From Haliotis rubra (Eukaryota): a stretch of DNA of 64,000 bases. A program made the position numbers and the translations under genes. This document shows positions 811-50,310 of the stretch, one piece after another. The notes under the pieces are model-generated. The model worked only from the letters and a program-made list of their open reading frames with translations, was not told the origin of the DNA and did not search any database. Position 1 is the stretch's first letter. The number at the start of each line of letters is the position of its first letter. The DNA is taken from contig NW_025765669.1 of the NCBI RefSeq assembly GCF_003918875.1, forward strand, positions 310,001-374,000, written 5' to 3'.

Positions 811-3800
811 GTAAGATAAGAAACGCTCCGTTGCATGTGATATTTCGGGTGAACACAAGATATTCTGTTTAATGTAAGATTCTCGGATATTCTTAGAGAT
901 GTCATTTAGTGGATGTCTAAAAATAACCATGACAATCACAAAAGTGTAACAAAGTTGATTTTCTTTCTAAAAGTCAAAGCAATGAAATTCATTTAGAACG
1001 CAGTTAGACAGTAATGCCATTGCCACGTCCATTCATCTAGCCGTCACTGCACAATGGCTACTAAACTGCAAAATATATTATGGGTCGTGTTATTCTTTTC
1101 CACTGACACGGGTAAGCTGCGGCCTCATAAACTATCTTTATTATGACAGCGTTTAGAAATATATTATTACCTGTCTAACTCATACCAACGTAAACATTTA
1201 ATCTTATGTATGAGATCAGGTTAGGAAATATCAGGTGTTGCAGTTATCTGGGAATCCTGCACTGTGACACCCCTGTATACACCAGGTCTAACTATGCTAA
1301 GTATAGCATGATCAATAACAGTTCATCCTTTGGCTGTGGGTGTTGAAAGTAACTCAATAACATTGCTGTATTGACATTACAAATGATTTTAAGATGTGTT
1401 ATTCACCTTTAATGCAGTTCATGCATTATTTGCATTATGTCAGATTTATTTTCTGAAACGAATTTATAGATATTGATTAATTGATTAAGTTGTTAGATTG
1501 TGAAGAATGTGTAGTAACTATCCATTCAGCAAATTTCATTCATATTCATACTCTGTTAGGCCTCAAAGTGTGGTTTTGGTGATGAATATGCATGAATTTT
1601 GTTAAAACGTCCTGTTGTGCAGGCCATATGTATGATGGTGTTATTAACAGAACATATTTTATTTACAGGTAATATAAACAGTAAATTACATTATTTTGAA
1701 ACCCTGAAATCAGTGGAGGTGCGGAGCCGTGTTAAGAGAAGCACTGATGGACACAGTACAGCTTATAAGGAAGTCTGGTTCAGTGCCTTAGGAAGGTATG
1801 ACTTTTATAAGCCTTTGTATTGTAAACAGGTTCCTATTTTTAATTCTGGTGTCCCCCTGCGATATTGCTGGAATATTGCTAAAAACTCACTCACTGATAT
1901 TTTTAAAGCTTTTAGTATCTGCTTTCAGATTATGATTCATGTTAGGTATTTGATATATATTTGGCATACTTCATTATTTTTACTCCAATGGATCTTTAAA
2001 CTGCAGTGAGTAAACCATTATAAAATTTAATTCTTACTGAAATTCTGGATCACTCTCATCTGGTTTCTAATTTTAGTCTGTCCATATGATGCCCTGAGTG
2101 TGTTAAGTATCTCATGAGCTCATGACAGTGAGCTGAGTGCAGCATAAAAATAAACTCACTCACTCACTCCAGGCGGACAGACGACACAGTCCACACCTAA
2201 AAATGATAATCCAGGACAAAATACATCCTCTGCAGCCCAGGCAACTGACAGGCTAGATTTGTCAGGTTCATAGACATGGTTTATGCACATCATCATAATC
2301 AGCTTGTGTAGATCAGTGCTCATGATGTCAATCACTAGATTGTCCAGGCTCACTTATTTACAGACCTCTGTTACATGGCTGGAATACTGCCCTGCGCTGC
2401 ATAAAACACACACACTTTGGTTAACATGGGAATATATATTGCAGCCAATGTGTAAACTGACAAATGTATGATTGGGTGATTAGGTCAACTTCTAGTACTA
2501 GCATAATTAGTCTCTTAAAATCACATTGCTGTTTCTAAGCCCTTTTGAACTTTGTAAACGAAATATTTGGGCATTTTGTTCCTTGCCTAAATGAATTTTA
2601 GTTTACAAAATTGCCTGAAATTTTCATTTGTTTCACACATGACTTTAACATGTATTCATTGTTAAATATTTTCATTACCTTGTGTGTTTTGACCGCCTCC
2701 GTGGTGTAGTGGTTAGAGCGTCCGCCCGGAGAGCGGAAGGTCGCGGGTTCGATCCCCGACCGTGTCATACCAAAAGACATTAAAATATGGTGCTTGTTGG
2801 TCCCTGCCTGGCGCTCGGCATTAATGAGTACAACAAGGACAGGTTGGCTCGGAGTCAGTATAATGAGTCTGAGTGGGGTATTCATGCTTCACTGCGGCAT
2901 GGTATCTCAGTGGGCTAGCACTATAAAACCAGCTTCAGTCTGGGCTAGTACAAGCAGCCGCACATATACATACACACGCATGCACGTCGTCATATGAGCG
3001 AAATATTCTCAAGCACGACGTTAAACACAATTTCACCTCACCTCACCTCACCTGCCTTGTGTGTTTCAGAAATTTCAATATGGTAATAAAACCTGATGTC
3101 AGCGTGTTGTCCAACTCTTTCCAATCTTACACAGTCAATGAAGATGGGCAGACGGAGCCATTTCATGTCAACAGGAATAATTTCTATACTGGACATTTAA
3201 CAGGTTTGTTTGTTTGAAAGTTTTCAATTTAGTGTTTCAGTTCAGCATGGTTTTTGGCTTCCACCCTCACTTGCACATTAATTCAGAGTTATCTCCCTTA
3301 GCTTCATGCTTGCTCAGTTCCAATTTTAAACAAACATACAGTAATAATACCCAACAATGCTTAATATGTCATGTCATCTCTGATATTGTTCCCATTGGAA
3401 TCATCAACCACCTTAAATATAAAATATGTTTTATCTTTATCTTAAATATTGTTTATCATTTTCAGATGGAGATGGCCATGTTGATGCTCATTTAGAAGAT
3501 TCAGAGTGGAATATTCAAGTAGCAATGAAAGATGACATATATTCTGTTGAGGTAATGAATTTCCCTGAAGTTGTATGTTTCTCATATACAACAACCAATT
3601 CTCGGTCACTGTCAGAGAGCTCGCCAGAATAAGGACATTTTGCACTTATGTTGAAGACATGTAAATGCTTATGATATCAATCATTGGTTTGCCTGGGGTT
3701 AGTTACAGGGATGGAAATTACCGCACAAAGCAAGCCCACTAGGAGTGACTATTGAGGGGGAAACAACTATTGCGATAGCGATAGTCTATTGCAACATACT

Positions 3801-12800: not shown

Positions 12801-15800
12801 ACAATTTTGAATCAGGATCTAAGATTAACAATGAAAGTTCTTAGCAGTTTTGTAGGGGCCAATATCTTGGTTTCCAAATGATTACCGTTTTGACTAAATT
12901 AGAATTAATAAAAACTTTTCAGAAAAATATAATAGCACAAGATTTTGTTTCAAAGAGTGGATGATGAAAAACGTTTCTGCTTTATGTGAATCATTTCAGT
13001 GACAGTTGCCTAAAGCATTTTATTTCTATAAAAAAAATGTTAAAAAATGTTGCTCCTGCCTTTTTTGAAAAATTGCCATGAAGACCTACCGGTAACAATA
13101 TGTTCTCACCACAAATGTCAGAGTGATGTTCCATGTAGTAATTTAGTTATTGTTCCATTATTCGTTTAGGAGTTCAGCAGCCATGTCTTCTTTGGCCGAT
13201 TCTGCCTAGCTCATCTGTTCACGTACCAGACTTTCAGTGGCGGCGTCCTGGGCCTGGCGTACATAGCGTCACCGCGACTTCGGCACTGTAGGGGGGATAT
13301 GTTCCCAACGTAAGTGATGTCTCATATTGGCCTCGTATCTCCAGCACTTGGCGCCATTTCAGGAAAATGATTGCCATAAAAATGTCTCATGTTGTATGCT
13401 ATGTTTTCTGGCCCATGGGGTAACCTAGTGGTTAGAGCGTTCACTTGCTACGCTGCAGACCCAGGTTCGATTCCCCACATGGTCATGTGTGAAGCCCATT
13501 TTTGTTGTCCCCTGCCATGATCTTGTTGGGATATTGATAAAAGCAGGGTAACACCATACTCACTTACTCACTATAAGCTTGGGGGAACTATGAAGATTGT
13601 GCCAACCGAAAAATACTAGAGAGTCTGTAGAAACTGGTTCTTGTTCAGGGGACGGTGAGGTAGCCTAATGGTTAAAGCGTTGGCTCATCAAGCCGAAGAC
13701 CCAGGTTTTCGAATCCCCACATCGGCACAATGTGTGAAGCCCATTTCTGGTGTCCCCTGCCGTGATGTTGCTGGAATATTGCTAAAAGCGGCGTAAAACT
13801 AAACTCAGTCAGTCAGTCTTGTTCAGTCTGTTAATGTTTCACATGTTTTGACATCAATATAACTTGTCATTAGGGTTGAATGGTATTACCGGTATATTAC
13901 AATACGCTTTAGAAACAGTAGGTATTGCAATACTTTTTTGGAGAACTTGAATACTAGGTAACAAAAATTACATGAAGTTTTATTATTATCTCAGTGGTTA
14001 AAGTTCAAATCTACACAGGCTTTTGTTCATACACAACTGATGTTTCCTTTTGTAATCAATTGACAAAACTGCTTACTTTACATATTATGACTTGTATAAA
14101 ACAGAGAATAGACTCCCTGACAAACCAACCTAATTTTGAGATTGCCCGTTATTCTGAAACATGTAGAAACCTGGATCTGTTTACAATCAGTGTCACTGTC
14201 AAATACTCTCATGACCTTGTATCATGGTACACTTCTGTATCTCATTACACCAGTGTAAGAAATAGTTTCCAAATTTTGCAAGCCAGTCGGGCTATCTATG
14301 CCTGAAAGTTACTAGGCCACAAAATAATTCACTAGCCGAAATTTGAATGTAGAAACTAAGCAAAATATTACAGAAAGGTAAAATACCATCATTTATCAGG
14401 CCATAATCTTGCATAATTTAAAAGTGTATTATAACTTAACAAGTGGGAGAGAATGATGTATTTAAAAATTGAACCCGTGAAAATTCATTAGACAGTCGGG
14501 CCAGTGACTGTAGAGATTTACTGGCCTGACTAGATTTTTACTAGCCACGGGCTAGCAGGCCAGTGGCTATTTTGCACACTGCATTACACCACTGACATAT
14601 ATGGATTTACATTCAGCTTATACAAGGCGGGGCAAGAAGCGCTACCTCAACACAGGTTGGAGCAGCTCCCTAAACACAGCAGGCATCAGGCAACTCACCC
14701 AGGAGTCCATGCTGGTTACAGCTCATGGTAGGTACCTGTCTACAGCTCATGGTAGGTACCTGTGTACAGCTCATGATAGGTATCTGTCTACAGCTCAGAG
14801 TAGGTGCCTGTGTACAGCTCATAGTAGGTGCCTGTGTCCAGCTCATAGTAGGTACCTCTCTACAGCTCATAGTAGGTACCTCTCTACAGCTCATGGTAGG
14901 TGCCTGTGTACAGCTCATAGTAGGTGCCTGTGTACAGCTCATAGTAGGTACCTCTCTACAGCTCATAGTAGGTACCTGTGTACAGCTCATAGTAGGTGCC
15001 TGTGTACAGCTCATAGTAGGTGCCTGTGTACAGCTCATAGTAGGTGCCTGTCAGCTCACAGCCTCATAGTAGGTGCCTGTGTACAGCTCATAGTAGGTAC
15101 CTCTCTACAGCTCATAGTAGGTAGCTCATAGCTAGGTACCTGTCTACAGCTCATTGTAGTAGTGTACAGCTCATACCCTCTGTACAGCTCATAGTAGGTA
15201 CCTCTCTACAGCTCATAGTAGGTACCTCTCTACAGCTCATAGGTACCTGTGGTAGCCTGTGTAGGTACCTCTCTACAGCTCATAGTAGGTACCTCTCTAC
15301 AGCTCATAGTAGGGTACCTGTGTACAGCTCATGGTACAGCCTCTCTACAGCTCATAGTAGGTACCTGTGTACAGCTCATGGTAGGTACCTCTCTACAGCT
15401 CATAGTAGGTACCTGTGTACAGCTCATGGTAGGTACCTGTGTACAGCTCATGGTAGGTACCTCTCTACAGCTCATAGTAGGTACCTGTGTACAGCTCATG
15501 GTAGGTACCTCTCTACAGCTCATGGTAGGTACCTGTGTACAGCTCATGGTAGGTACCTGTGTACAGCTCATAGTAGGTACCTGTGTACAGCTCATGGTAG
15601 GTACCTCTCTACAGCTCATAGTAGGTACCTGTGTACAGCTCATGGTAGGTACCTCTCTACAGCTCATAGTAGGTACCTGTGTACAGCTCATGGTAGGTAC
15701 CTCTCTACAGCTCATGGTAGGTACCTGTGTACAGCTCATAGTAGGTACCTGTGTACAGCTCATTGTAGGTACGTCTCTACAGCTCATAGTAGGTGCCTGT

Positions 15801-18800
15801 GTACAGCTTATAGTAGGTACCTGTGTAAAGCTCATAGTAGGTACCTCTCTACAGCTCATGGTAGGTACCTCTCTACAGCTCATAGTAGGTGCCTGTGTAC
15901 AGCTCATTGTAGGTGCCTGTGTACAGCTCATAGTAGGTACCTCTCTACAGCTCATAGTAGATGCCTTAGTCTGTCTCACAGTCCCTGAACCACATTAATT
16001 TCCCTACTGCCAAGCCCTCTCTGCAGTGCTAAAGTCCTAAATAAAGCAAGTCTAGATTTCCTCAGGTTCTGAATCTCTGGTCTCCTTAGGGCTCCTTTTC
16101 AATATAAATGGGCTTGTTTGTTACTATCAAAATTATATATATTCACAGACTAAGCCTTAGTCTATAGGTGCCTGTGTACAGCTCATAGTAGGTGCCTGTG
16201 TACAGCTCATGGTAGGTACCTCTCTACAGCTCATAGTAGGTACCTCTCTACAGCTCATGGTAGGTACCTCTCTACATCTCATAGTAGGTACCTGTGTACA
16301 GCTCATGGTAGGTACCTCTCTACAGCTCATGGTAGGTACCTGTGTACAGCTCATAGTAGGGACCTGTGTACAGCTCATAGTAGGTACCTGTATACAGCTC
16401 ATTGTAGGTACCTCTCTACAGCTCATGGTAGGTACCTGTCTACAGCTCAGGGTAGGTAAATGTCTATGCCACACACTAAAATCTATGCTGGTTACAGCTC
16501 ATATTGGCTACCTGTGTGTTGCTGAAGGTGGGTATCTGTTTATTGCTCAGTGTACATACACATTAACATCCATTTTTTTGTGCCTATGGTATACTCTTTA
16601 CCACATACTTCATATGAAATAAAAACATTGATGATCTCATTGGTTGATCACTGGTTAACTTCATGGACAGTACAGATCCAATCTTCTTCAAGCAACCTAT
16701 CCATATGTCATTCATGCTTTCATTTATACCATAGCTTCTAAATGCCTCTTGCAGACATGCCATAATATATATAATTTATGAATATTTATTTTGTCTTTTC
16801 ATTATTCCTGGATCATCAACAGAATTCGGTAAGTATTCTTTTTACAGTCTGATCAAAAGAGTATTCTGTTGACAAAAAATAACCTGAACAAAAGATTATA
16901 AAAATGTATTCAATACAGATACTGTTATAGTACTAATCATGTCGTTCAAGGAAACAAATAACGAGCCACTGATTCAGCTGACATGCTCATTAGGTTAGGG
17001 GTGGTTGAGAGTGGCTTTGTGGATGGAGTGTTCAAGCAGCACACCACAGAATTGGGTTCTTTTCCCTGCTATGATACTGCTGGAATACATCTGTGATGTG
17101 ACTCTACTCTCTCACTATCTACCAAAAGACGTTAAAATATGGTACTTGTTGGTCCCTGCCTGGCTTTCGGCATTAATGGGTACAACAAGGACTGGTCGAC
17201 TTGGAGTCAATATAATGTGTCTGAGTGGGGTATTCATGCTTCACTGCGGCATGGTATCTCAGTGGGCTAGCACTATAAAACCAGCTTCAGTCTGGGCTAG
17301 TACAAGCAGCCACAACTCGGGAAATTATGTACCATTTGCAAAACATGCAAAATAGGTAACTATTTTTGAAGGTATATGTGATCCTGATGTGTCTGTAAGT
17401 ATATATGGTAAGGATGTGTATGTAAGTATATATGGTAAGGATGTGTCTGTAAGTATATATGGTAAGGATGTGTCTGTAAGTATATTTGGTAAGGATGTGT
17501 CTGTAAGTATATATGGTAAGAATTGTGTTGGAAACGCCTGTATACATGTACAACAAGCATGTTTTTTTAAAGGATATAAGGTAAGCATTTTTATGTTAAT
17601 ATATATGGTAAGGATGTGTATGTAAGTATATATGGTAAGGATTTTTATGTAAGTTTATTGTAAGGATTTTGTTGTGTAGCTTCATTTTGTTTCAGGTCAT
17701 AACTGGGGCAGTGAGCATGACGTTGATACAGACGAGTGTGCCCCTGACTCCTTCAACAAGGGACGCTACATCATGTATCCCTACGCCGTCAGCGGATGGG
17801 AGGAGAACAACTATGTAAGAAGTTCCATCTTTGTCTTGACATGTTCATCATGTTGAGCTGATTCCATGCAATAAACTACCCCTGAAGATCCAGATTGGAA
17901 CTGATCTTCTGTAAACCCATGCTTGTCGTAAGAGGCGACTAACGGGATCGGGTGGTCAGGCTTGCTGACTTGGTTGACACATGTCATCGGTTCCCATTTG
18001 CATAGATCGATGTTCATGCTGTTGATCACTGGATTGTCTGGTCCAGACTCGATTATTTACAGACCGCTGCCATATCACTGGAATATTGCTCAGTGCGGCG
18101 TAAAACTAAACTCACTCACCCATGCAATAAACACAAGATACTTGGATCATTGTGTCAGTGCGCTGAAACAAAACTCTCAGCTCCCAGGGGAATATGCAGC
18201 CTAAGCTGGTATTCAGACATTGAAAGGGAACTCATTTCACATGCTTAATGGTAGGCTGGCTTGCACACTGTTCTCACAATTAAGCATGAAGTTCTTGAAT
18301 ATCTTAATGTATGGTTATTAATGACATGCTAAGGATCTGTAAATGCTGGCCATGCTTTGAAGACCCATGAAGATCCTGGTTAGAATTGACCTTCAGTAAC
18401 CCATGCTTGTCGTATGAAACAACTAACGGGATCAGGTGGTCACGCTCGCTGACTTGATTGACACACATCATCGTATCCCAATTGCGTAGATTGATGCTCA
18501 TGATGTTGATCACTGGATTGTCTGTTGTCTCAATTCTTCTCAGCCCGCCACCATACAGCTGGAATATTGCTGAGTGCGTCATTAAACAAACAACCATGCT
18601 TTAAATATGGTGGAGCACTCAGACCCTCTGCGTTCCAGACTTGAACCAGTTCAACCATTAGACACAAGTGTGCACTAACCTATAGTAGTGAGTAGTTACA
18701 GGTAGTGAATAAGAAAGTAGTGTTAGTCCAGACTGATTGATGAGCTGTATTCTGCCCAGGTGTTCTCCCCCTGCAGCATGCGTTATGTGTCCGGATGTGC

Positions 18801-21800
18801 TGAGATCTAAAGCTTACAAGTGTTTTGTAGGTAAGTTCACTGAACTGTCCTTGCCGTCTTGCTCTGACACGGTGCACTTATACGTAGAAAAGCAGCTCAT
18901 TGGCCTATAATTGGCTCGTCACACCAACATTCGATACTATGCAGTCAAATGTGTTGAACTTTTATGTGTCAACTTTATGGTTGTCTCAAAGTGAAAGCTT
19001 TGTTGCTGCGTATTCCATATTTATTCATCAGTTTGCTCTTGGGTAAAACCTCGGATAACCTAAAGTATTGACATCACTCCCCTCAGATGTGTCACAACAG
19101 TGTTTCTTCTTTGCGTGGCATTTAGAAGCTGGTGTGATGAACAAGTGGTATAGTTCTATTGGAGTTATTTGCTTGACAACAGTGTTACCACATATATTGT
19201 CATAAAGGAGTTGTATATCCATAGCACTATATATCTGTATATCCCCTGTTCACAATAGTGTTTGGCTGTATTTCCCACAGGGGTACAAGATGTGATATAC
19301 AGGGCGGTGGGGTAGCCTAGTGGTTTAAGTGTTCACTCATCATGCCAAAGACCTGGGTTCGATTCCCAGCATGGGTGTAATATGTGAAGCCCATTTCTGG
19401 TTTCCCCCTCCGTGATATTGCTGGAATTAGCAGTTCCCAGAGTTATTTATGAATATGGTCCCACATGCAGGAACTGTCATATCTCTGCACATCTATACTG
19501 TTATATTGAAGTAGAGAAAATTGTGCTACAGACAGTTAATGTAAATGAAAGAATCAGTGAAATTCTTCCCTCACTATCAGCCAATGGCAAGTCTGTTACA
19601 GCTGGATGTCACTTGACGTGATCCCTGACTTCTCGTGTTGACAGAGAGGAAGGACAATGTGCCGTACTGTGGGAACGGCATCGTGGACAACCTGGAGAAC
19701 TGTGACGCTGGACCTGACGGCGACGACTGCTGCACCAGCAAATGTCGGTTCAAGTCAGGAGCCATTTGCAGGTAGATAAACTTAGTGCAGGTAGAGGGGC
19801 GGTAGGGTAGCCTAGTGGTTAAGGCGTTTGCATCACGCCAAAGACCCTTGTTCGATTCCTCACAATGTTGGTGTCCCCTGGCGTGATATTACTGGAATAT
19901 TGCTAAAAGTAGCGTAAAAGCGATACTCACTCATCCCATCACATCCACCGTCATCACATCCCACCCATCGTCACATCGCATCACATCACATCACATCGCA
20001 TCACATCGCATCACATCATCACATCACTCACTCACTCACTCACTCACTCACTAGTACAGGTAGATACACATAGTACAGATATATGAATGTAGTGCAGAAA
20101 GGAAGAGAGTTATGAACCTGGTGTTCGGAATGTTACGACCTATCGTAAATCTATATTTTATCATAGTCTTAAGCATAGCATAGAGCTACAAACATTTAGC
20201 GGATCGGGCTTCTGGTCCGATATGTGCACCGCCTCTGTGGTGTAGTGGTTAGAGCGTCCGCCCGGAGAGCGGAAGGTCGCGGGTTCGATCCCCGACCGCG
20301 TCATACCAAAAGATGTTAAAATATGGTACTTGTTGGTCCCTGCCTGGCGCTTGGCATTAATGGGTACAACAAGGACTGGTCGGCTCGGAGTCAGTATACT
20401 GAGTCTGAGTGGGGTATTCATGCTTCACTGCGGCATGGTATCTCAGTGGGCTAGCACTATAAAACCAGCTTAAGTCTGGGCTAGTACAAGCAGCCGCACA
20501 TACACATACACCCGCATGCACGTCGTCATATGAGCGAAATATTCTCAAGCACGACGTAAAGCCCAATTTCACCTCACCTCTGATATGTGCTTCACTCCAG
20601 TGAGTGAGTTTTCATGTTTGGTTGGTTTGCTGTTTAACGCCGCACTCAGCAATATTCCAGCTTTATGACAGCGGTCAGTACACAATCGCGTCTGGACCAG
20701 ATAGCCCAGTGATCAACAGCATGAGTACTGATCTACGCAATTGGCGATACAATCTGACCACCCAATCTCATTAGTCACCTCTTACGGTGAGTTTTGAACC
20801 AATCCTGGTCTGTGATTCTGGCCAGTGAGAAAGGTATGACCTTGACCTTGTCTCTGTTTCAGCCCAATGAACTATGAGTGCTGTGAGGACTGCCAGATGG
20901 CCAGCGTGGACTACCAGTGCCGAAGCTCCTCCCCCAACAGCTGTCTACAGTCCACCAAGTGCAAGTATCCTTGGCAACCATCACCCCAGAAACCGACAAT
21001 TTTATGCTTAGTCTCCCAAAAATTATGTTACAAATGTCCTATATATCACAGCATGTAATTTTACATGTTAGCAAATAGCAAAAGAGGGGTTTTGTCAAAA
21101 CTGAACACACATTCATGATACTTTGATATTTTTTACAAAATAAAAGTTATAAATCTATCCTTTTTGAGGGTCTGAATACTAGTACTTATTATAGGTAGAG
21201 AGGCTTCATGGGAAAATAAATGTTGCATAAAATGGTGGAGAGACGAACAATAACACCAACCTCAGTGGCACTTCATGTATGATACAATAGAGACTTGTGG
21301 TTGCGGTATTAAGGTGCAGTTCTTTCTTAGAAATAAATAAGTATAAAATAAAAAAATTGACATCGCTGAAATATTTAGCAATTGATAACATTTCTTGTGA
21401 TCAGAAATATATGTTTTTCCTTAATGCTGTCCCAGTGGATCTAGTTTTGACTGTCCAATGGCAGAGCCTAAAGTGAATGATACAAAGTGTATAGATGGGT
21501 AGGTATAGTTTAAGGTTATATTTGGGGATTAATCCCCAAACATAATCAGTGATTGATTTTGCTAACAAAATAGGTGTTGGGCAAGCCTAGTGGTTAAAGT
21601 GTTCGCTTGTTAAAGTGTTCGCTTGTCACACCGAAGACCATGGTACAGTGTGTGAAGCCCATTTCTGGTGTCCCCCGCCGTGATATTGCTGGAATATTGC
21701 TAAAAGCGGCGTAAAACTAAACTCACTCACTACTAACAAAAGAAGCTGGATCTGAAGGAATTTAAAGTTTGTTAGTTTATTGACTGAACGATCATGCAAT

Positions 21801-49000: not shown

Positions 49001-49094
49001 TGCAAATGAATATACTTTATTCATAACATGACGACTTTTACTCCAAAAATCATGTTTACCGAAAAATCCCTCATCATGTTCTTTTTATTTTCAG

Positions 49095-50310
49095 CATCAA
49101 CTACATTTTGGGTGGTTTTGCCACGTTTGCAAAGCTCCGGTCCAGCTGTGACGATGACTGGGTAGACCGACTAAATCACCTGTACACTGTCATCATCCTG
49201 ACCGTATTTGCTGTGTTTGTTGGCTATGGTCAGTTCCTTGGCAATCCTATTGAATGTTTCTGTCCACCAGATTTTTCGGCAGCGAGGGTTGCCTATGTCA
49301 AGTCACTCTGCTGGGTTAAAAACACCTACTATGTTCACATCGACGAAGTGATCCCATCTCAAGAGGAACACCGGAAGTCGACCGAAATTCCGTACTACCA
49401 ATGGGTTCCCATAATCCTCCTCTTCATGGCATTCCTTTTCAAGCTTCCGTCTGTATTCTGGCGTTTGCTCAATGGCGCGACTGGGTTGAGCCTTGATAAG
49501 CTGGTTACTATGGCGGTTGACACCCAACTATGTCCAGCCGAGAAGTCGGAAGAAACGATTAGGCATATTGCGCAGTATATCAACCGATGGCTTCAGGCTC
49601 ACAGGGACTACCACTGGAACATATGCGTGCGCATACGTCACAGGATGTCCAGACTCTGTTGCTGCATGTGCGGCAAGCGGGATGGAGTGTATCTCACGCG
49701 ACTTTATGTCTTCATTAAGCTTCTCTACATTGTGGTAGTTCTTAGTCAGCTCTACCTCTTGAATGCCTTCCTTGGACAATGGTACAGCTTGTATGGTTTC
49801 GAAGTCATCAATTCGCTCATGGCGGACAACAGCGACCTTATGCTGAATTCTCCCCGTTTCCCGTTCGAAACGCTATGCGACTTCAAGGTCCGCCAGTTCA
49901 CAAACGTCCAACCCTACACAATCCACTGCAACCTGCCGTACAACATCCTAAACGAAAGAATCTTTGCCTTCCTGTGGTTCTGGTACGTGTGCGTGGCAAC
50001 CATTACCATTGCAAACTTCCTGTTCTGGATTGTCAGGAACAATGTGCGCGTGAAGCAATTCGGTTATGTCAAGAAGTATCTCAAGGTCATGGACGAGCTT
50101 CACGGAGACGAAGACCGGAAGTTGGCTCGAAAGTTTGCAGAGCAGTATCTCCGGAGTGACGGCATCTTCGTCCTGCGAGTGGTCGGCAAGAATACCAATG
50201 AGATAGTCCTCGGTGATATCATACAGAATCTATGGCGACTCTATAAGAACAACCCCATGATGGAAAAAACAGCTCGTCGGGCGGAGAGAGGAGACTACAT
50301 GGCGGCATGA
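49095..50310 (+). CDS. Innexin (gap junction protein), main exon
   Basis: DDDWVDRLNH, IECFCP..CW, YYQWVP, SPRFP..LCDF..HCNL, NERIFAFLWFW; four hydrophobic segments; acceptor ttttcag ending 49094; TGA ends 50310. Confidence 0.96.

What the first reader, a model, noticed from the sequence alone, without database searches (positions are those of the whole stretch)
16823..16828. Catalytic glutamate of the ADAM17 HExxH motif depends on a 6-nt micro-exon: a possible splice switch for protease activity
Seen: exon 11 ends ACA GCT CAT G (TAH) and exon 13 begins GT CAT AAC TGG GGC AGT GAG CAT GAC (GHNWGSEHD). The only fit I found for the missing E-x is cag|AATTCG|gtaagt, which gives H-E-F-G-H. Established: the Glu of HExxHxxGxxH is the general base in metzincins. 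Inference: the exon is symmetric (phase 1-1, 6 nt), so skipping gives an in-frame [12 protein letters not shown] product with no premature stop. That product would be full-length and membrane-anchored but lack the Glu and correct His spacing, i.e. a dead or decoy sheddase. No TGC motif sits just upstream of the acceptor, so it may be constitutive rather than an Srrm3/4-type neural micro-exon. Automated annotation would probably miss it and call the enzyme inactive.
Basis: partly seen in the sequence, partly recalled or inferred. Interest (0 to 1): 0.87.

Follow-up and report, generated by a model that had tools for sequence, protein, structure and literature searches.

The report
Six-base exon encodes ADAM17 catalytic glutamate
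In this abalone's ADAM17-like sheddase gene the catalytic glutamate sits on a real six-base exon that is conserved across molluscs and annelids, appears to be included as a rule, and is often missed by gene annotation; no evidence was found that it works as an on/off splice switch.

Summary
Exon 14617-14727 ends VTAH+G. Exon 17696-17814 starts GT-CAT (GHNWGSEHD). The only good source of the missing Glu-x is cag|AATTCG|gtaagt at 16823-16828, about 0.002 expected by chance.

The exon looks real and ancient. One YAG|AR-NNN-G|GTAAG exon lies in the matching intron of two other abalones, a snail, two bivalves, a cephalopod and an annelid. Among abalones only the wobble base of the second codon varies. 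A nemertean has only the upstream intron, so the exon probably arose by gain of a second intron 6 nt downstream.

Two RNA contigs bridge the flanking exons. Their depth figures fit five unplaced letters between the exons (inclusion), not skipping. This is indirect, because the letters themselves were not shown.

The H. rufescens RefSeq and Capitella JGI models already contain HEFGH.

The "splice switch" is unsupported. No skipped transcript was seen, the splice signals are strong and conserved, and only assembled contigs were available. My reading is a constitutive micro-exon, a new member of a known kind. The scan had not noted this exon on other DNA.

The parts
14617..14727 (+). It encodes ...[36 protein letters not shown] plus the first base (G) of the Glu codon. 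Its donor is G|gtaggt.
   Evidence: Translation. tblastn of the Haliotis ADAM17-like proteins. RNA contigs X2 record 12 and X3 record 17 cover exactly 14617-14727.
14728..16822 (+). Intron a (2,095 nt, phase 1 inside the Glu codon). Its position is shared with the annelid and nemertean orthologues.
14717..16466 (+). 24-nt minisatellite (about 72 units). Its unit is the last 10 nt of the exon plus the 5' splice site. It sits at the start of intron a.
   Evidence: Also present in H. rufescens (L002:16610-17377). It is the subject of the separate note s1-347367.
16783..16822 (+). Pyrimidine-rich tract and acceptor (...ttttgtcttttcattattcctggatcatcaacag) of the micro-exon. It is nearly invariant among three abalone species.
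   Evidence: Alignment A1.
16823..16828 (+). 6-nt micro-exon AATTCG. It gives bases 2-3 of Glu (the catalytic general base), Phe, and base 1 of Gly in H-E-F-G-H.
   Evidence: Sequence. Uniqueness. Orthologous exons in nine further loci. RNA contig arithmetic. A DNA run shows C>G at 16827 (Phe to Leu).
16829..17695 (+). Intron b (867 nt, phase 1 inside the Gly codon), with donor gtaagt. It is present in molluscs and annelids and absent in the nemertean Tubulanus. It holds a 27-nt tandem repeat rich in gtaag motifs at 17386-17670.
17050..17055 (+). Decoy 6-mer cacag|AATTGG|gttctt inside a SINE-like element. It would read Glu-Leu. It is not conserved and has a weak donor. It may be where the H. 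rubra RefSeq model (HELGH) placed the six letters; that is an inference.
17696..17814 (+). It starts GT CAT... and encodes (G)[39 protein letters not shown], carrying the 2nd and 3rd zinc-binding His.
   Evidence: RNA contig X1 record 6 covers 17695-17814.

Best explanation
The window is the ADAM17-like (TACE-type) metalloprotease gene of an abalone. It is identical to the Haliotis rubra assembly.

The zinc-binding motif [12 protein letters not shown] is split by two phase-1 introns only six bases apart. The Glu-Phe dipeptide, including the catalytic general-base Glu, is therefore carried by a 6-nt exon at 16823-16828. The exon has a long conserved pyrimidine tract and a consensus gtaagt donor, and it is spliced into the main mRNA. 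I infer that it is a constitutive exon needed for any active enzyme.

The arrangement dates back at least to the common ancestor of the molluscs and annelids sampled. It most likely arose when a second intron was gained just downstream of an older intron. The nemertean Tubulanus still has only the older one.

Because six bases cannot be aligned reliably, gene-prediction pipelines often drop the exon or misplace it. That produces public protein models that look catalytically dead.

Shown: the sequence, its uniqueness, its conservation, and its presence in some curated models. Indirect: its inclusion in this genus's RNA. Inferred: that it is constitutive.
For: 1. Sequence and reading frame.

2. 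It is the only strong candidate in the interval. Chance expectation is about 0.002.

3. Exactly one YAG|AR NNN G|GTAAG site lies in the orthologous interval of each of these, with expectations of 0.0000-0.004 each:
- H. rufescens: AATTTG
- H. asinina: AATTAG
- Bulinus: AATTCG
- Tegillarca: AATTAG
- Mytilus: AAATTG
- Argonauta: AAATTG
- Capitella gene 157290: AATTCG

4. Among the three abalones and a DNA run, only the third base of the second codon varies (C, T, A, G, giving Phe or Leu). About 40 nt of acceptor flank and the donor are nearly invariant.

5. Models that contain the two residues match the genomic micro-exon. H. rufescens XP_046344498.2 reads HEFGH, Capitella 157290 reads HEFGH, and the octopus models read HEIGH, as the Argonauta exon predicts.

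6. RNA contigs X1 record 6 and X3 record 17 join the two flanking exons. The binned depths 1.11 and 1.03 match five unplaced letters between them (expected 1.110 and 1.033). They do not match direct joining (1.221 and 1.127).

7. All 16 models of 300 aa or more that lack E-x come from molluscs or annelids, the clade that has the micro-exon.

8. Family identity: Reprolysin_2/5 and ADAM17_MPD Pfam hits. The catalytic domain matches human ADAM17 at E = 2.9e-73, with [12 protein letters not shown] aligned to HELGHNFGAEHD.
Against: - The RNA evidence in this genus is indirect. Only Logan contigs were available. The six letters were not printed, because the joint tables were swamped by repeats. Inclusion rests on depth arithmetic for two low-depth contigs (3.7x and 4.4x).
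- Contigs drop minor isoforms, so constitutive inclusion is not demonstrated.
- The RNA runs differ from the window by 1-5% in exons, so they may come from another individual or a sister species.
- The H. rubra RefSeq protein reads HELGH while the assembly's exon encodes EF. The model therefore did not simply use 16823-16828 as assembled.
- Some oyster RefSeq isoforms differ exactly at this site (E385D, and a 6-aa insertion after HEF). These could be artefacts or real alternative splicing.
Confidence: 0.8

Rival explanations
1. Regulated cassette. In some tissues, stages or immune states the 6-nt exon is skipped. The result is a full-length, membrane-anchored ADAM17-like protein reading TAH-GHNWG, with no general base and broken His spacing, which acts as a dead or decoy sheddase.
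For: - The exon is symmetric (phase 1-1), so skipping is in frame and should escape nonsense-mediated decay.
- Micro-exons are inherently hard to define.
- Annotated oyster isoforms differ exactly at this spot. C. virginica X1 and X2 differ only by E385D, and XP_078311484.1 has six extra residues after HEF.
- A Capitella tandem paralogue carries GATTTG (Gly-Phe), so catalytically dead relatives of this protein do exist.
Against: - No skipped transcript was observed. Both bridging RNA contigs fit inclusion.
- The donor is consensus gtaagt and the pyrimidine tract is strong and conserved in every mollusc and annelid locus examined.
- The 'skipped' public models occur in pipelines known to lose tiny exons. 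They sit beside sister-species models that include the exon, so they are not evidence of skipping.
- The oyster isoform differences are what misplacing six letters on decoy sites would produce. The window itself has such a decoy at 17050-17055.
Confidence: 0.07
2. The true source of the two residues is the other 6-mer, cacag|AATTGG|gttctt at 17050-17055 (Glu-Leu). This would match the HELGH of the H. rubra RefSeq protein.
For: - It has AG and GT flanks and the right phase.
- The RefSeq protein for this assembly reads HELGH, not HEFGH.
Against: - The donor is weak (gttctt) and there is no pyrimidine tract.
- It lies inside a SINE-like repeat that recurs in the window.
- No counterpart appears in the strict-pattern scans of the H. 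rufescens or H. asinina introns, where the 16823-type exon is conserved with its flanks.
- A DNA run carries G at 16827, which turns the conserved exon itself into AATTGG (Glu-Leu). That explains HELGH transcripts without the decoy.
Confidence: 0.03
3. There is no such exon. The abalone protein really reads TAH-GHNWG, as in the H. cracherodii and H. asinina RefSeq models, and is a pseudo-protease.
For: Two RefSeq abalone models and 14 other mollusc or annelid models lack the two residues.
Against: - A splice-competent 6-mer encoding Glu-x is conserved in every one of those lineages examined, including H. asinina itself.
- Sister-species models include it.
- The RNA contig arithmetic fits five extra letters.
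- Everything else in the zinc motif and the Met-turn region is under clear conservation.
Confidence: 0.02

Closest known systems
Human ADAM17 / TACE (PDB 1BKC, 2I47; metzincin motif HELGHNFGAEHD)
   Same: - The catalytic domain aligns over about 255 residues at E = 2.9e-73, with [12 protein letters not shown] on HELGHNFGAEHD.
- The same Pfam set is found, including the ADAM17 membrane-proximal domain.
- The Glu is the general base of metzincins (established knowledge).
   Different: Here the Glu-x dipeptide has its own 6-nt exon. Whether vertebrate ADAM17 has an intron at either position was not tested here. Sheddase activity of the abalone protein is untested.
Conserved constitutive micro-exons of animals and plants (exons of 3-30 nt that aligners and annotators miss; example: the 3-base exon in MAP4K5, PMC8632122)
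   Same: - Tiny, symmetric and in frame.
- Flanked by strong canonical splice sites.
- Deeply conserved.
- Lost or misplaced by standard pipelines.
   Different: It carries the catalytic residue of an enzyme, rather than a surface loop or linker. Four searches of the paper library found no description of it.
SRRM3/SRRM4-dependent neural micro-exons of bilaterians
   Same: The size class (27 nt or less) and frame preservation.
   Different: No UGC motif lies between the pyrimidine tract and the acceptor in the window. A TGC in H. rufescens is not conserved. No tissue data are available, and skipping would abolish the function rather than tune an interaction surface.
Catalytically dead protease relatives (for example non-proteolytic ADAMs lacking HExxH, or iRhoms)
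   Same: The hypothetical skipped isoform, and the Capitella paralogue 224264 (HGFGH if its GATTTG exon is used), would be such proteins.
   Different: In those families the inactive form is a separate gene, not a splice isoform. No skipped isoform was seen here.

Membership tests
ADAM17/TACE-type M12B metalloprotease | Reprolysin-type catalytic domain | tested here: met
   Pfam Reprolysin_2 (9.2e-32) and Reprolysin_5 (5.2e-30) on the H. rubra model P0152, whose locus is 100% identical to the window over 14500-17900. Match to human ADAM17 structures at E = 2.9e-73.
ADAM17/TACE-type M12B metalloprotease | Complete zinc motif HExxHxxGxxH with the general-base Glu | tested here: met
   Met only when 16823-16828 is spliced in, giving [12 protein letters not shown]. 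Without it the motif is H-G-H-N-W-G.
ADAM17/TACE-type M12B metalloprotease | ADAM17-specific membrane-proximal domain | tested here: met
   PF16698 ADAM17_MPD, 32.5 bits against a cut-off of 26.2, residues 562-618 of P0152.
ADAM17/TACE-type M12B metalloprotease | Ectodomain shedding activity | not testable with these tools
   Needs expression and a shedding assay.
Micro-exon (real, spliced exon of 30 nt or less) | Canonical AG...GT flanks, in frame with the neighbouring exons | tested here: met
   cag|AATTCG|gtaagt, phase 1-1. It is unique in the interval apart from a weak decoy.
Micro-exon (real, spliced exon of 30 nt or less) | Present in mature mRNA | tested here: inconclusive
   The depth arithmetic of two bridging RNA contigs fits five extra letters. 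The H. rufescens RefSeq model contains EF, matching its genomic AATTTG. The letters themselves were not displayed for this genome's runs.
Micro-exon (real, spliced exon of 30 nt or less) | Conserved in orthologues with a coding-type substitution pattern | tested here: met
   Nine further loci from Gastropoda, Bivalvia, Cephalopoda and Annelida. Only wobble-position variation among abalones.
Alternative cassette exon (splice switch) | Both inclusion and skipping isoforms observed in RNA | tested here: not met
   Only inclusion-compatible contigs were seen. Contigs cannot show minor isoforms, so this is weak negative evidence.
SRRM3/4-type neural micro-exon | UGC motif close upstream of the 3' splice site | tested here: not met
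   No TGC in the 40 nt upstream of 16823.
SRRM3/4-type neural micro-exon | Neural-specific inclusion | not tested
   No tissue-resolved raw reads were available.

The most novel reading that the evidence does not exclude
The micro-exon is a regulated toggle. Either skipping it (TAH-GHNWG), or choosing an alternative 6-nt exon (as the E385D-only difference between the two C. virginica RefSeq isoforms would imply if real), yields a full-length, membrane-anchored but catalytically dead or weakened ADAM17. That protein would compete for substrates or iRhom-type partners, giving lophotrochozoans a splice-level control of shedding.
Probability: 0.07. Interest if true: 0.8.

Novelty: new member of a known kind. 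Interest (0 to 1): 0.42.

Why it matters
Practical value. At least 16 public ADAM17-like models from molluscs and annelids lack the catalytic Glu only because a 6-nt exon was dropped, and others may have it misplaced. These include RefSeq models of abalones, Biomphalaria and Littorina. Anyone inferring "inactive sheddase" from these records, or building alignments or trees from them, is misled. A simple pattern, YAG|AR NNN G|GTAAG between the TAH and GHNWG exons, repairs them.

Evolutionary value. This is a clean example of a micro-exon created by two phase-1 introns six bases apart. The nemertean shows the single-intron state.

Functional value. It marks a place where in-frame skipping would silently kill the enzyme. 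It is worth one cheap test on raw reads or by RT-PCR, but nothing yet says the cell uses it.

Tried and rejected
1. Searching short transcript-derived protein fragments for abalone cDNA across the junction (search for homologous proteins with a 96-aa piece and with region 330-450 of P0151). No Haliotis transcript fragments beyond the RefSeq cluster were found. The hits were mostly arthropods.

2. Read laying. The joint and "letters between" tables were filled by SINE and minisatellite joints (3,278 and 501 rows not shown). The exon-exon joints and the six letters were never printed, so I fell back on depth arithmetic.

3. Littorina and Lingula loci: no gene on record for those exact proteins.

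4. Paper searches for ADAM17 with microexon, microexon with HExxH, microexon with metalloprotease and catalytic glutamate, and missed microexons in molluscs. Nothing relevant turned up.

5. I considered that the E-x might come from an alternative donor within the minisatellite, or from a longer exon. This was rejected because HExxH fixes the gap at exactly six bases and only two 6-mers fit.

6. I considered the decoy at 17050-17055 and rejected it on splice strength and lack of conservation.

Vertebrate and arthropod intron positions were not examined in genomic DNA.

Full report
**What is in the window**

The + strand carries an ADAM17-like gene from about 760 to 32160 (tblastn with four abalone RefSeq proteins). 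The stretch 14500-17900 is 100% identical to Haliotis rubra assembly GCA_003918875.1, contig QXJH01000017.1.

- The exon at 14617-14727 ends ...LVTAH plus one G, followed by gtaggt.
- The exon at 17696-17814 starts, after tttcag, with GT CAT AAC TGG..., i.e. (G)HNWGSEHD....
- A metzincin needs HExxH, so exactly six bases of the form AR NNN G must come between these two exons.
- In the 2,968-nt interval only two AG|AR NNN G|GT sites exist.
  - 16823-16828 reads cag|AATTCG|gtaagt and lies behind a long pyrimidine tract.
  - 17050-17055 reads cacag|AATTGG|gttctt and lies inside a SINE-like repeat.
- With YAG and GTAAG required, the chance expectation is about 0.002.

The observation therefore stands as written. 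One addition: the exon end plus its donor is also the unit of a 24-nt minisatellite of about 72 units at 14717-16466. This is why ACAGCTCATG occurs 21 times.

**Is it a real exon? Comparative evidence**

A search with the downstream exon and cluster look-ups returned many ADAM17-like models. I fetched the genomic loci for ten of them.

| Species | Locus and coordinates | Exon | Residues |
|---|---|---|---|
| H. rufescens | L002:18737-18742 | AATTTG | Glu-Phe |
| H. asinina | L003:15081-15086 | AATTAG | Glu-Leu |
| Bulinus truncatus | L008:10769-10774 | AATTCG | Glu-Phe |
| Tegillarca granosa | L006:15675-15680 | AATTAG | Glu-Leu |
| Mytilus coruscus | L007:23886-23891 | AAATTG | Glu-Ile |
| Argonauta hians | L004:21376-21381 | AAATTG | Glu-Ile |
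| Capitella teleta gene 157290 | L009:3340-3345 | AATTCG | Glu-Phe |

- In each of these loci the interval between the ...TAH and GHNWG... exons contains exactly one YAG|AR NNN G|GTAAG site.
- Composition-based expectations are 0.0000-0.004 per interval.
- In Capitella 157290 the flanking introns are only 72 and 56 nt.
- In an alignment of three abalones, the roughly 40 nt before the exon and the donor are almost invariant, while the surrounding intron diverges. Inside the exon only the wobble base of the second codon changes.
- A DNA run adds a fourth state, 16827 C>G, giving Leu.
- The nemertean Tubulanus has the upstream intron at the same phase, but AATTCG is fused to the next exon (ctag|AATTCGGACACAAC).
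- The micro-exon therefore most likely arose by gain of a second intron six bases downstream of an older one, before annelids and molluscs split. Loss in nemerteans is the alternative.

**Is it a real exon? Transcript-level evidence**

- The RefSeq model of H. rufescens reads HEFGH, as its genomic AATTTG predicts.
- The JGI model of Capitella 157290 reads HEFGH.
- The octopus models read HEIGH, as the Argonauta exon predicts.

For this genus, only Logan contigs of four small RNA-type runs and two other runs were available. I laid X1, X2, X3 and X5 on 13100-19000.

- Contigs X3 record 17 (442 nt) and X1 record 6 (371 nt) run from the upstream exon into the downstream exon.
- The joint tables were swamped by repeats, so the six letters were not printed.
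- The binned depths are fully accounted for only if five letters lie unplaced between the exons.
  - X1's piece starts one base early, at 17695. That is consistent with either reading, because the exon-11 end and the micro-exon both end in G.
  - X3 in bin 17631-17827 reads 1.03. Inclusion predicts 1.033 and skipping predicts 1.127.
  - X1 in bin 14676-14872 reads 1.11. Inclusion predicts 1.110 and skipping predicts 1.221.
  - Control bins reproduce exactly: X1 2.68, X3 0.98, X2 0.56.
- This is indirect and rests on low-depth contigs, but two independent runs agree.

**Annotation**

- Of the retrieved models of 300 aa or more, 159 have HExGH and 16 read ...H-GHNWG.
- All 16 come from molluscs or annelids: H. 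cracherodii, H. asinina, Biomphalaria, Lymnaea, Bulinus, Plakobranchus, Nucella, Littorina, Argonauta, Tegillarca, Mytilus, Capitella 224264 and Paralvinella.
- The hole occurs only in the clade that has the micro-exon.
- The H. rubra RefSeq protein is tagged LOW QUALITY and reads HELGH, although the assembly's exon encodes EF.
  - Two things seen here can explain this. Other individuals carry G at 16827, which gives AATTGG. An exact AATTGG decoy lies at 17050-17055.
  - The tag itself is explained by an extra G at 18792/18793 in the next exon. That base shifts the frame into a stop in the assembly, and both an RNA contig and a DNA contig lack it.
  - Where the RefSeq model placed the six letters could not be checked with these tools.

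**The switch hypothesis**

- The logic is sound. The exon is symmetric, so skipping stays in frame and would remove the general base and the His spacing.
- Nothing observed shows that skipping happens.
  - The bridging contigs fit inclusion.
  - The splice signals are consensus-strength and conserved in every mollusc and annelid locus examined.
  - The "skipped" database models sit beside sister-species models that include the exon.
- Two leads keep a small probability alive.
  - C. virginica RefSeq isoforms X1 and X2 (740 aa each) differ at one residue only, the catalytic Glu (E385D). A newer oyster model carries six extra residues right after HEF.
  - Both are what misplaced six-letter alignments or an alternative acceptor would give. 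The Candidula model reading HDLCH shows that such decoys do get chosen. I could not fetch the oyster locus to decide.
- A Capitella tandem paralogue (224264) has GATTTG at the homologous spot, which would read HGFGH, a naturally Glu-less copy.

**Comparison and verdict**

- The protein is a bona fide ADAM17/TACE-type enzyme on domain content and on alignment to the solved human catalytic domain.
- The feature is a conserved, most likely constitutive micro-exon. That is a known kind of thing, but this one is notable for carrying a catalytic residue and for how often it is mis-annotated.
- Four literature searches found no description of it. It is already implicit in several public gene models.
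- I rate it a new member of a known kind, of moderate interest.

**Unexplained**

All three RNA runs show a small depth (1.0-1.5) in bin 16646-16842, which contains the micro-exon. The neighbouring bins show none. This is far more than six letters can give. The DNA run is also somewhat elevated there, so a low-copy repeat or pre-mRNA fragments are the likeliest cause. An alternative longer exon ending at the same donor is not excluded.

Noticed in passing
window 14717-16466; L002:16610-17377: A 24-nt minisatellite (about 72 units) has as its unit the last 10 nt of the active-site exon plus its 5' splice site. Twenty-one units keep the exact CATG|gtaggt junction, and each unit also parses as cag|CTCATG|gtaggt. 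It is present with 33 units in H. rufescens, so it is old. It is already the subject of note s1-347367.
   Followed up: partly
window 18792-18793: The assembly has TCCGGATGTG where the abalone proteins require TCC GAT GTG. The extra G shifts the frame of the next exon into a TAA stop. An RNA contig (X1) and a DNA contig (X5) both lack this base. It is probably an assembly error or a null allele, and it is the likely reason for the LOW QUALITY PROTEIN tag on the H. rubra RefSeq model.
   Followed up: partly
window 16827: The DNA run X5 reads G instead of C here, at full depth (78.9 of 78.9). That turns the micro-exon into AATTGG (Glu-Leu instead of Glu-Phe). It is either a Phe/Leu polymorphism or a species difference at the x position of HExxH.
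   Followed up: partly
window 17386-17670; L002:20276-20374: A 27-nt tandem repeat (5 + 4 units) is full of gtaagt/ggtaag donor-like motifs. It lies in the intron just upstream of the GHNWG exon and is also present in H. rufescens.
   Followed up: no
window 16646-16842: The three RNA-type runs each show depth 1.0-1.5 in this bin around the micro-exon and zero in both neighbouring bins. Six letters cannot explain this. Possible causes are a low-copy repeat, pre-mRNA fragments, or a longer alternative exon.
   Followed up: no
L005:4239-4244 (Capitella teleta gene 224264), compared with L009:3340-3345 (gene 157290, same contig): There are two tandem ADAM17-like paralogues. One has the micro-exon AATTCG (HEFGH). 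The other has tag|GATTTG|gtaagg, which would give HGFGH, i.e. the catalytic Glu replaced by Gly. It is a candidate natural pseudo-protease.
   Followed up: partly
proteins P0094 vs P0261, and P0255 (Crassostrea virginica RefSeq): Isoforms X1 and X2 of one oyster ADAM17-like gene differ only by E385D, at the catalytic Glu. Another model has VLWLFI inserted between HEF and GHNWG. This is either misplacement of the six letters and an alternative acceptor, or real alternative splicing at the micro-exon.
   Followed up: no
window 49027-50307: A 427-codon uninterrupted open frame on the + strand contains a YYQWV motif and several hydrophobic segments. It looks like an innexin (gap-junction) gene encoded in one large exon.
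   Followed up: no
window 2710-2994, 16999-17352, 20246-20470 and others: There are repeated SINE-like elements with extremely high depth in both the RNA and DNA runs. One of them holds the AATTGG decoy at 17050-17055.
   Followed up: no
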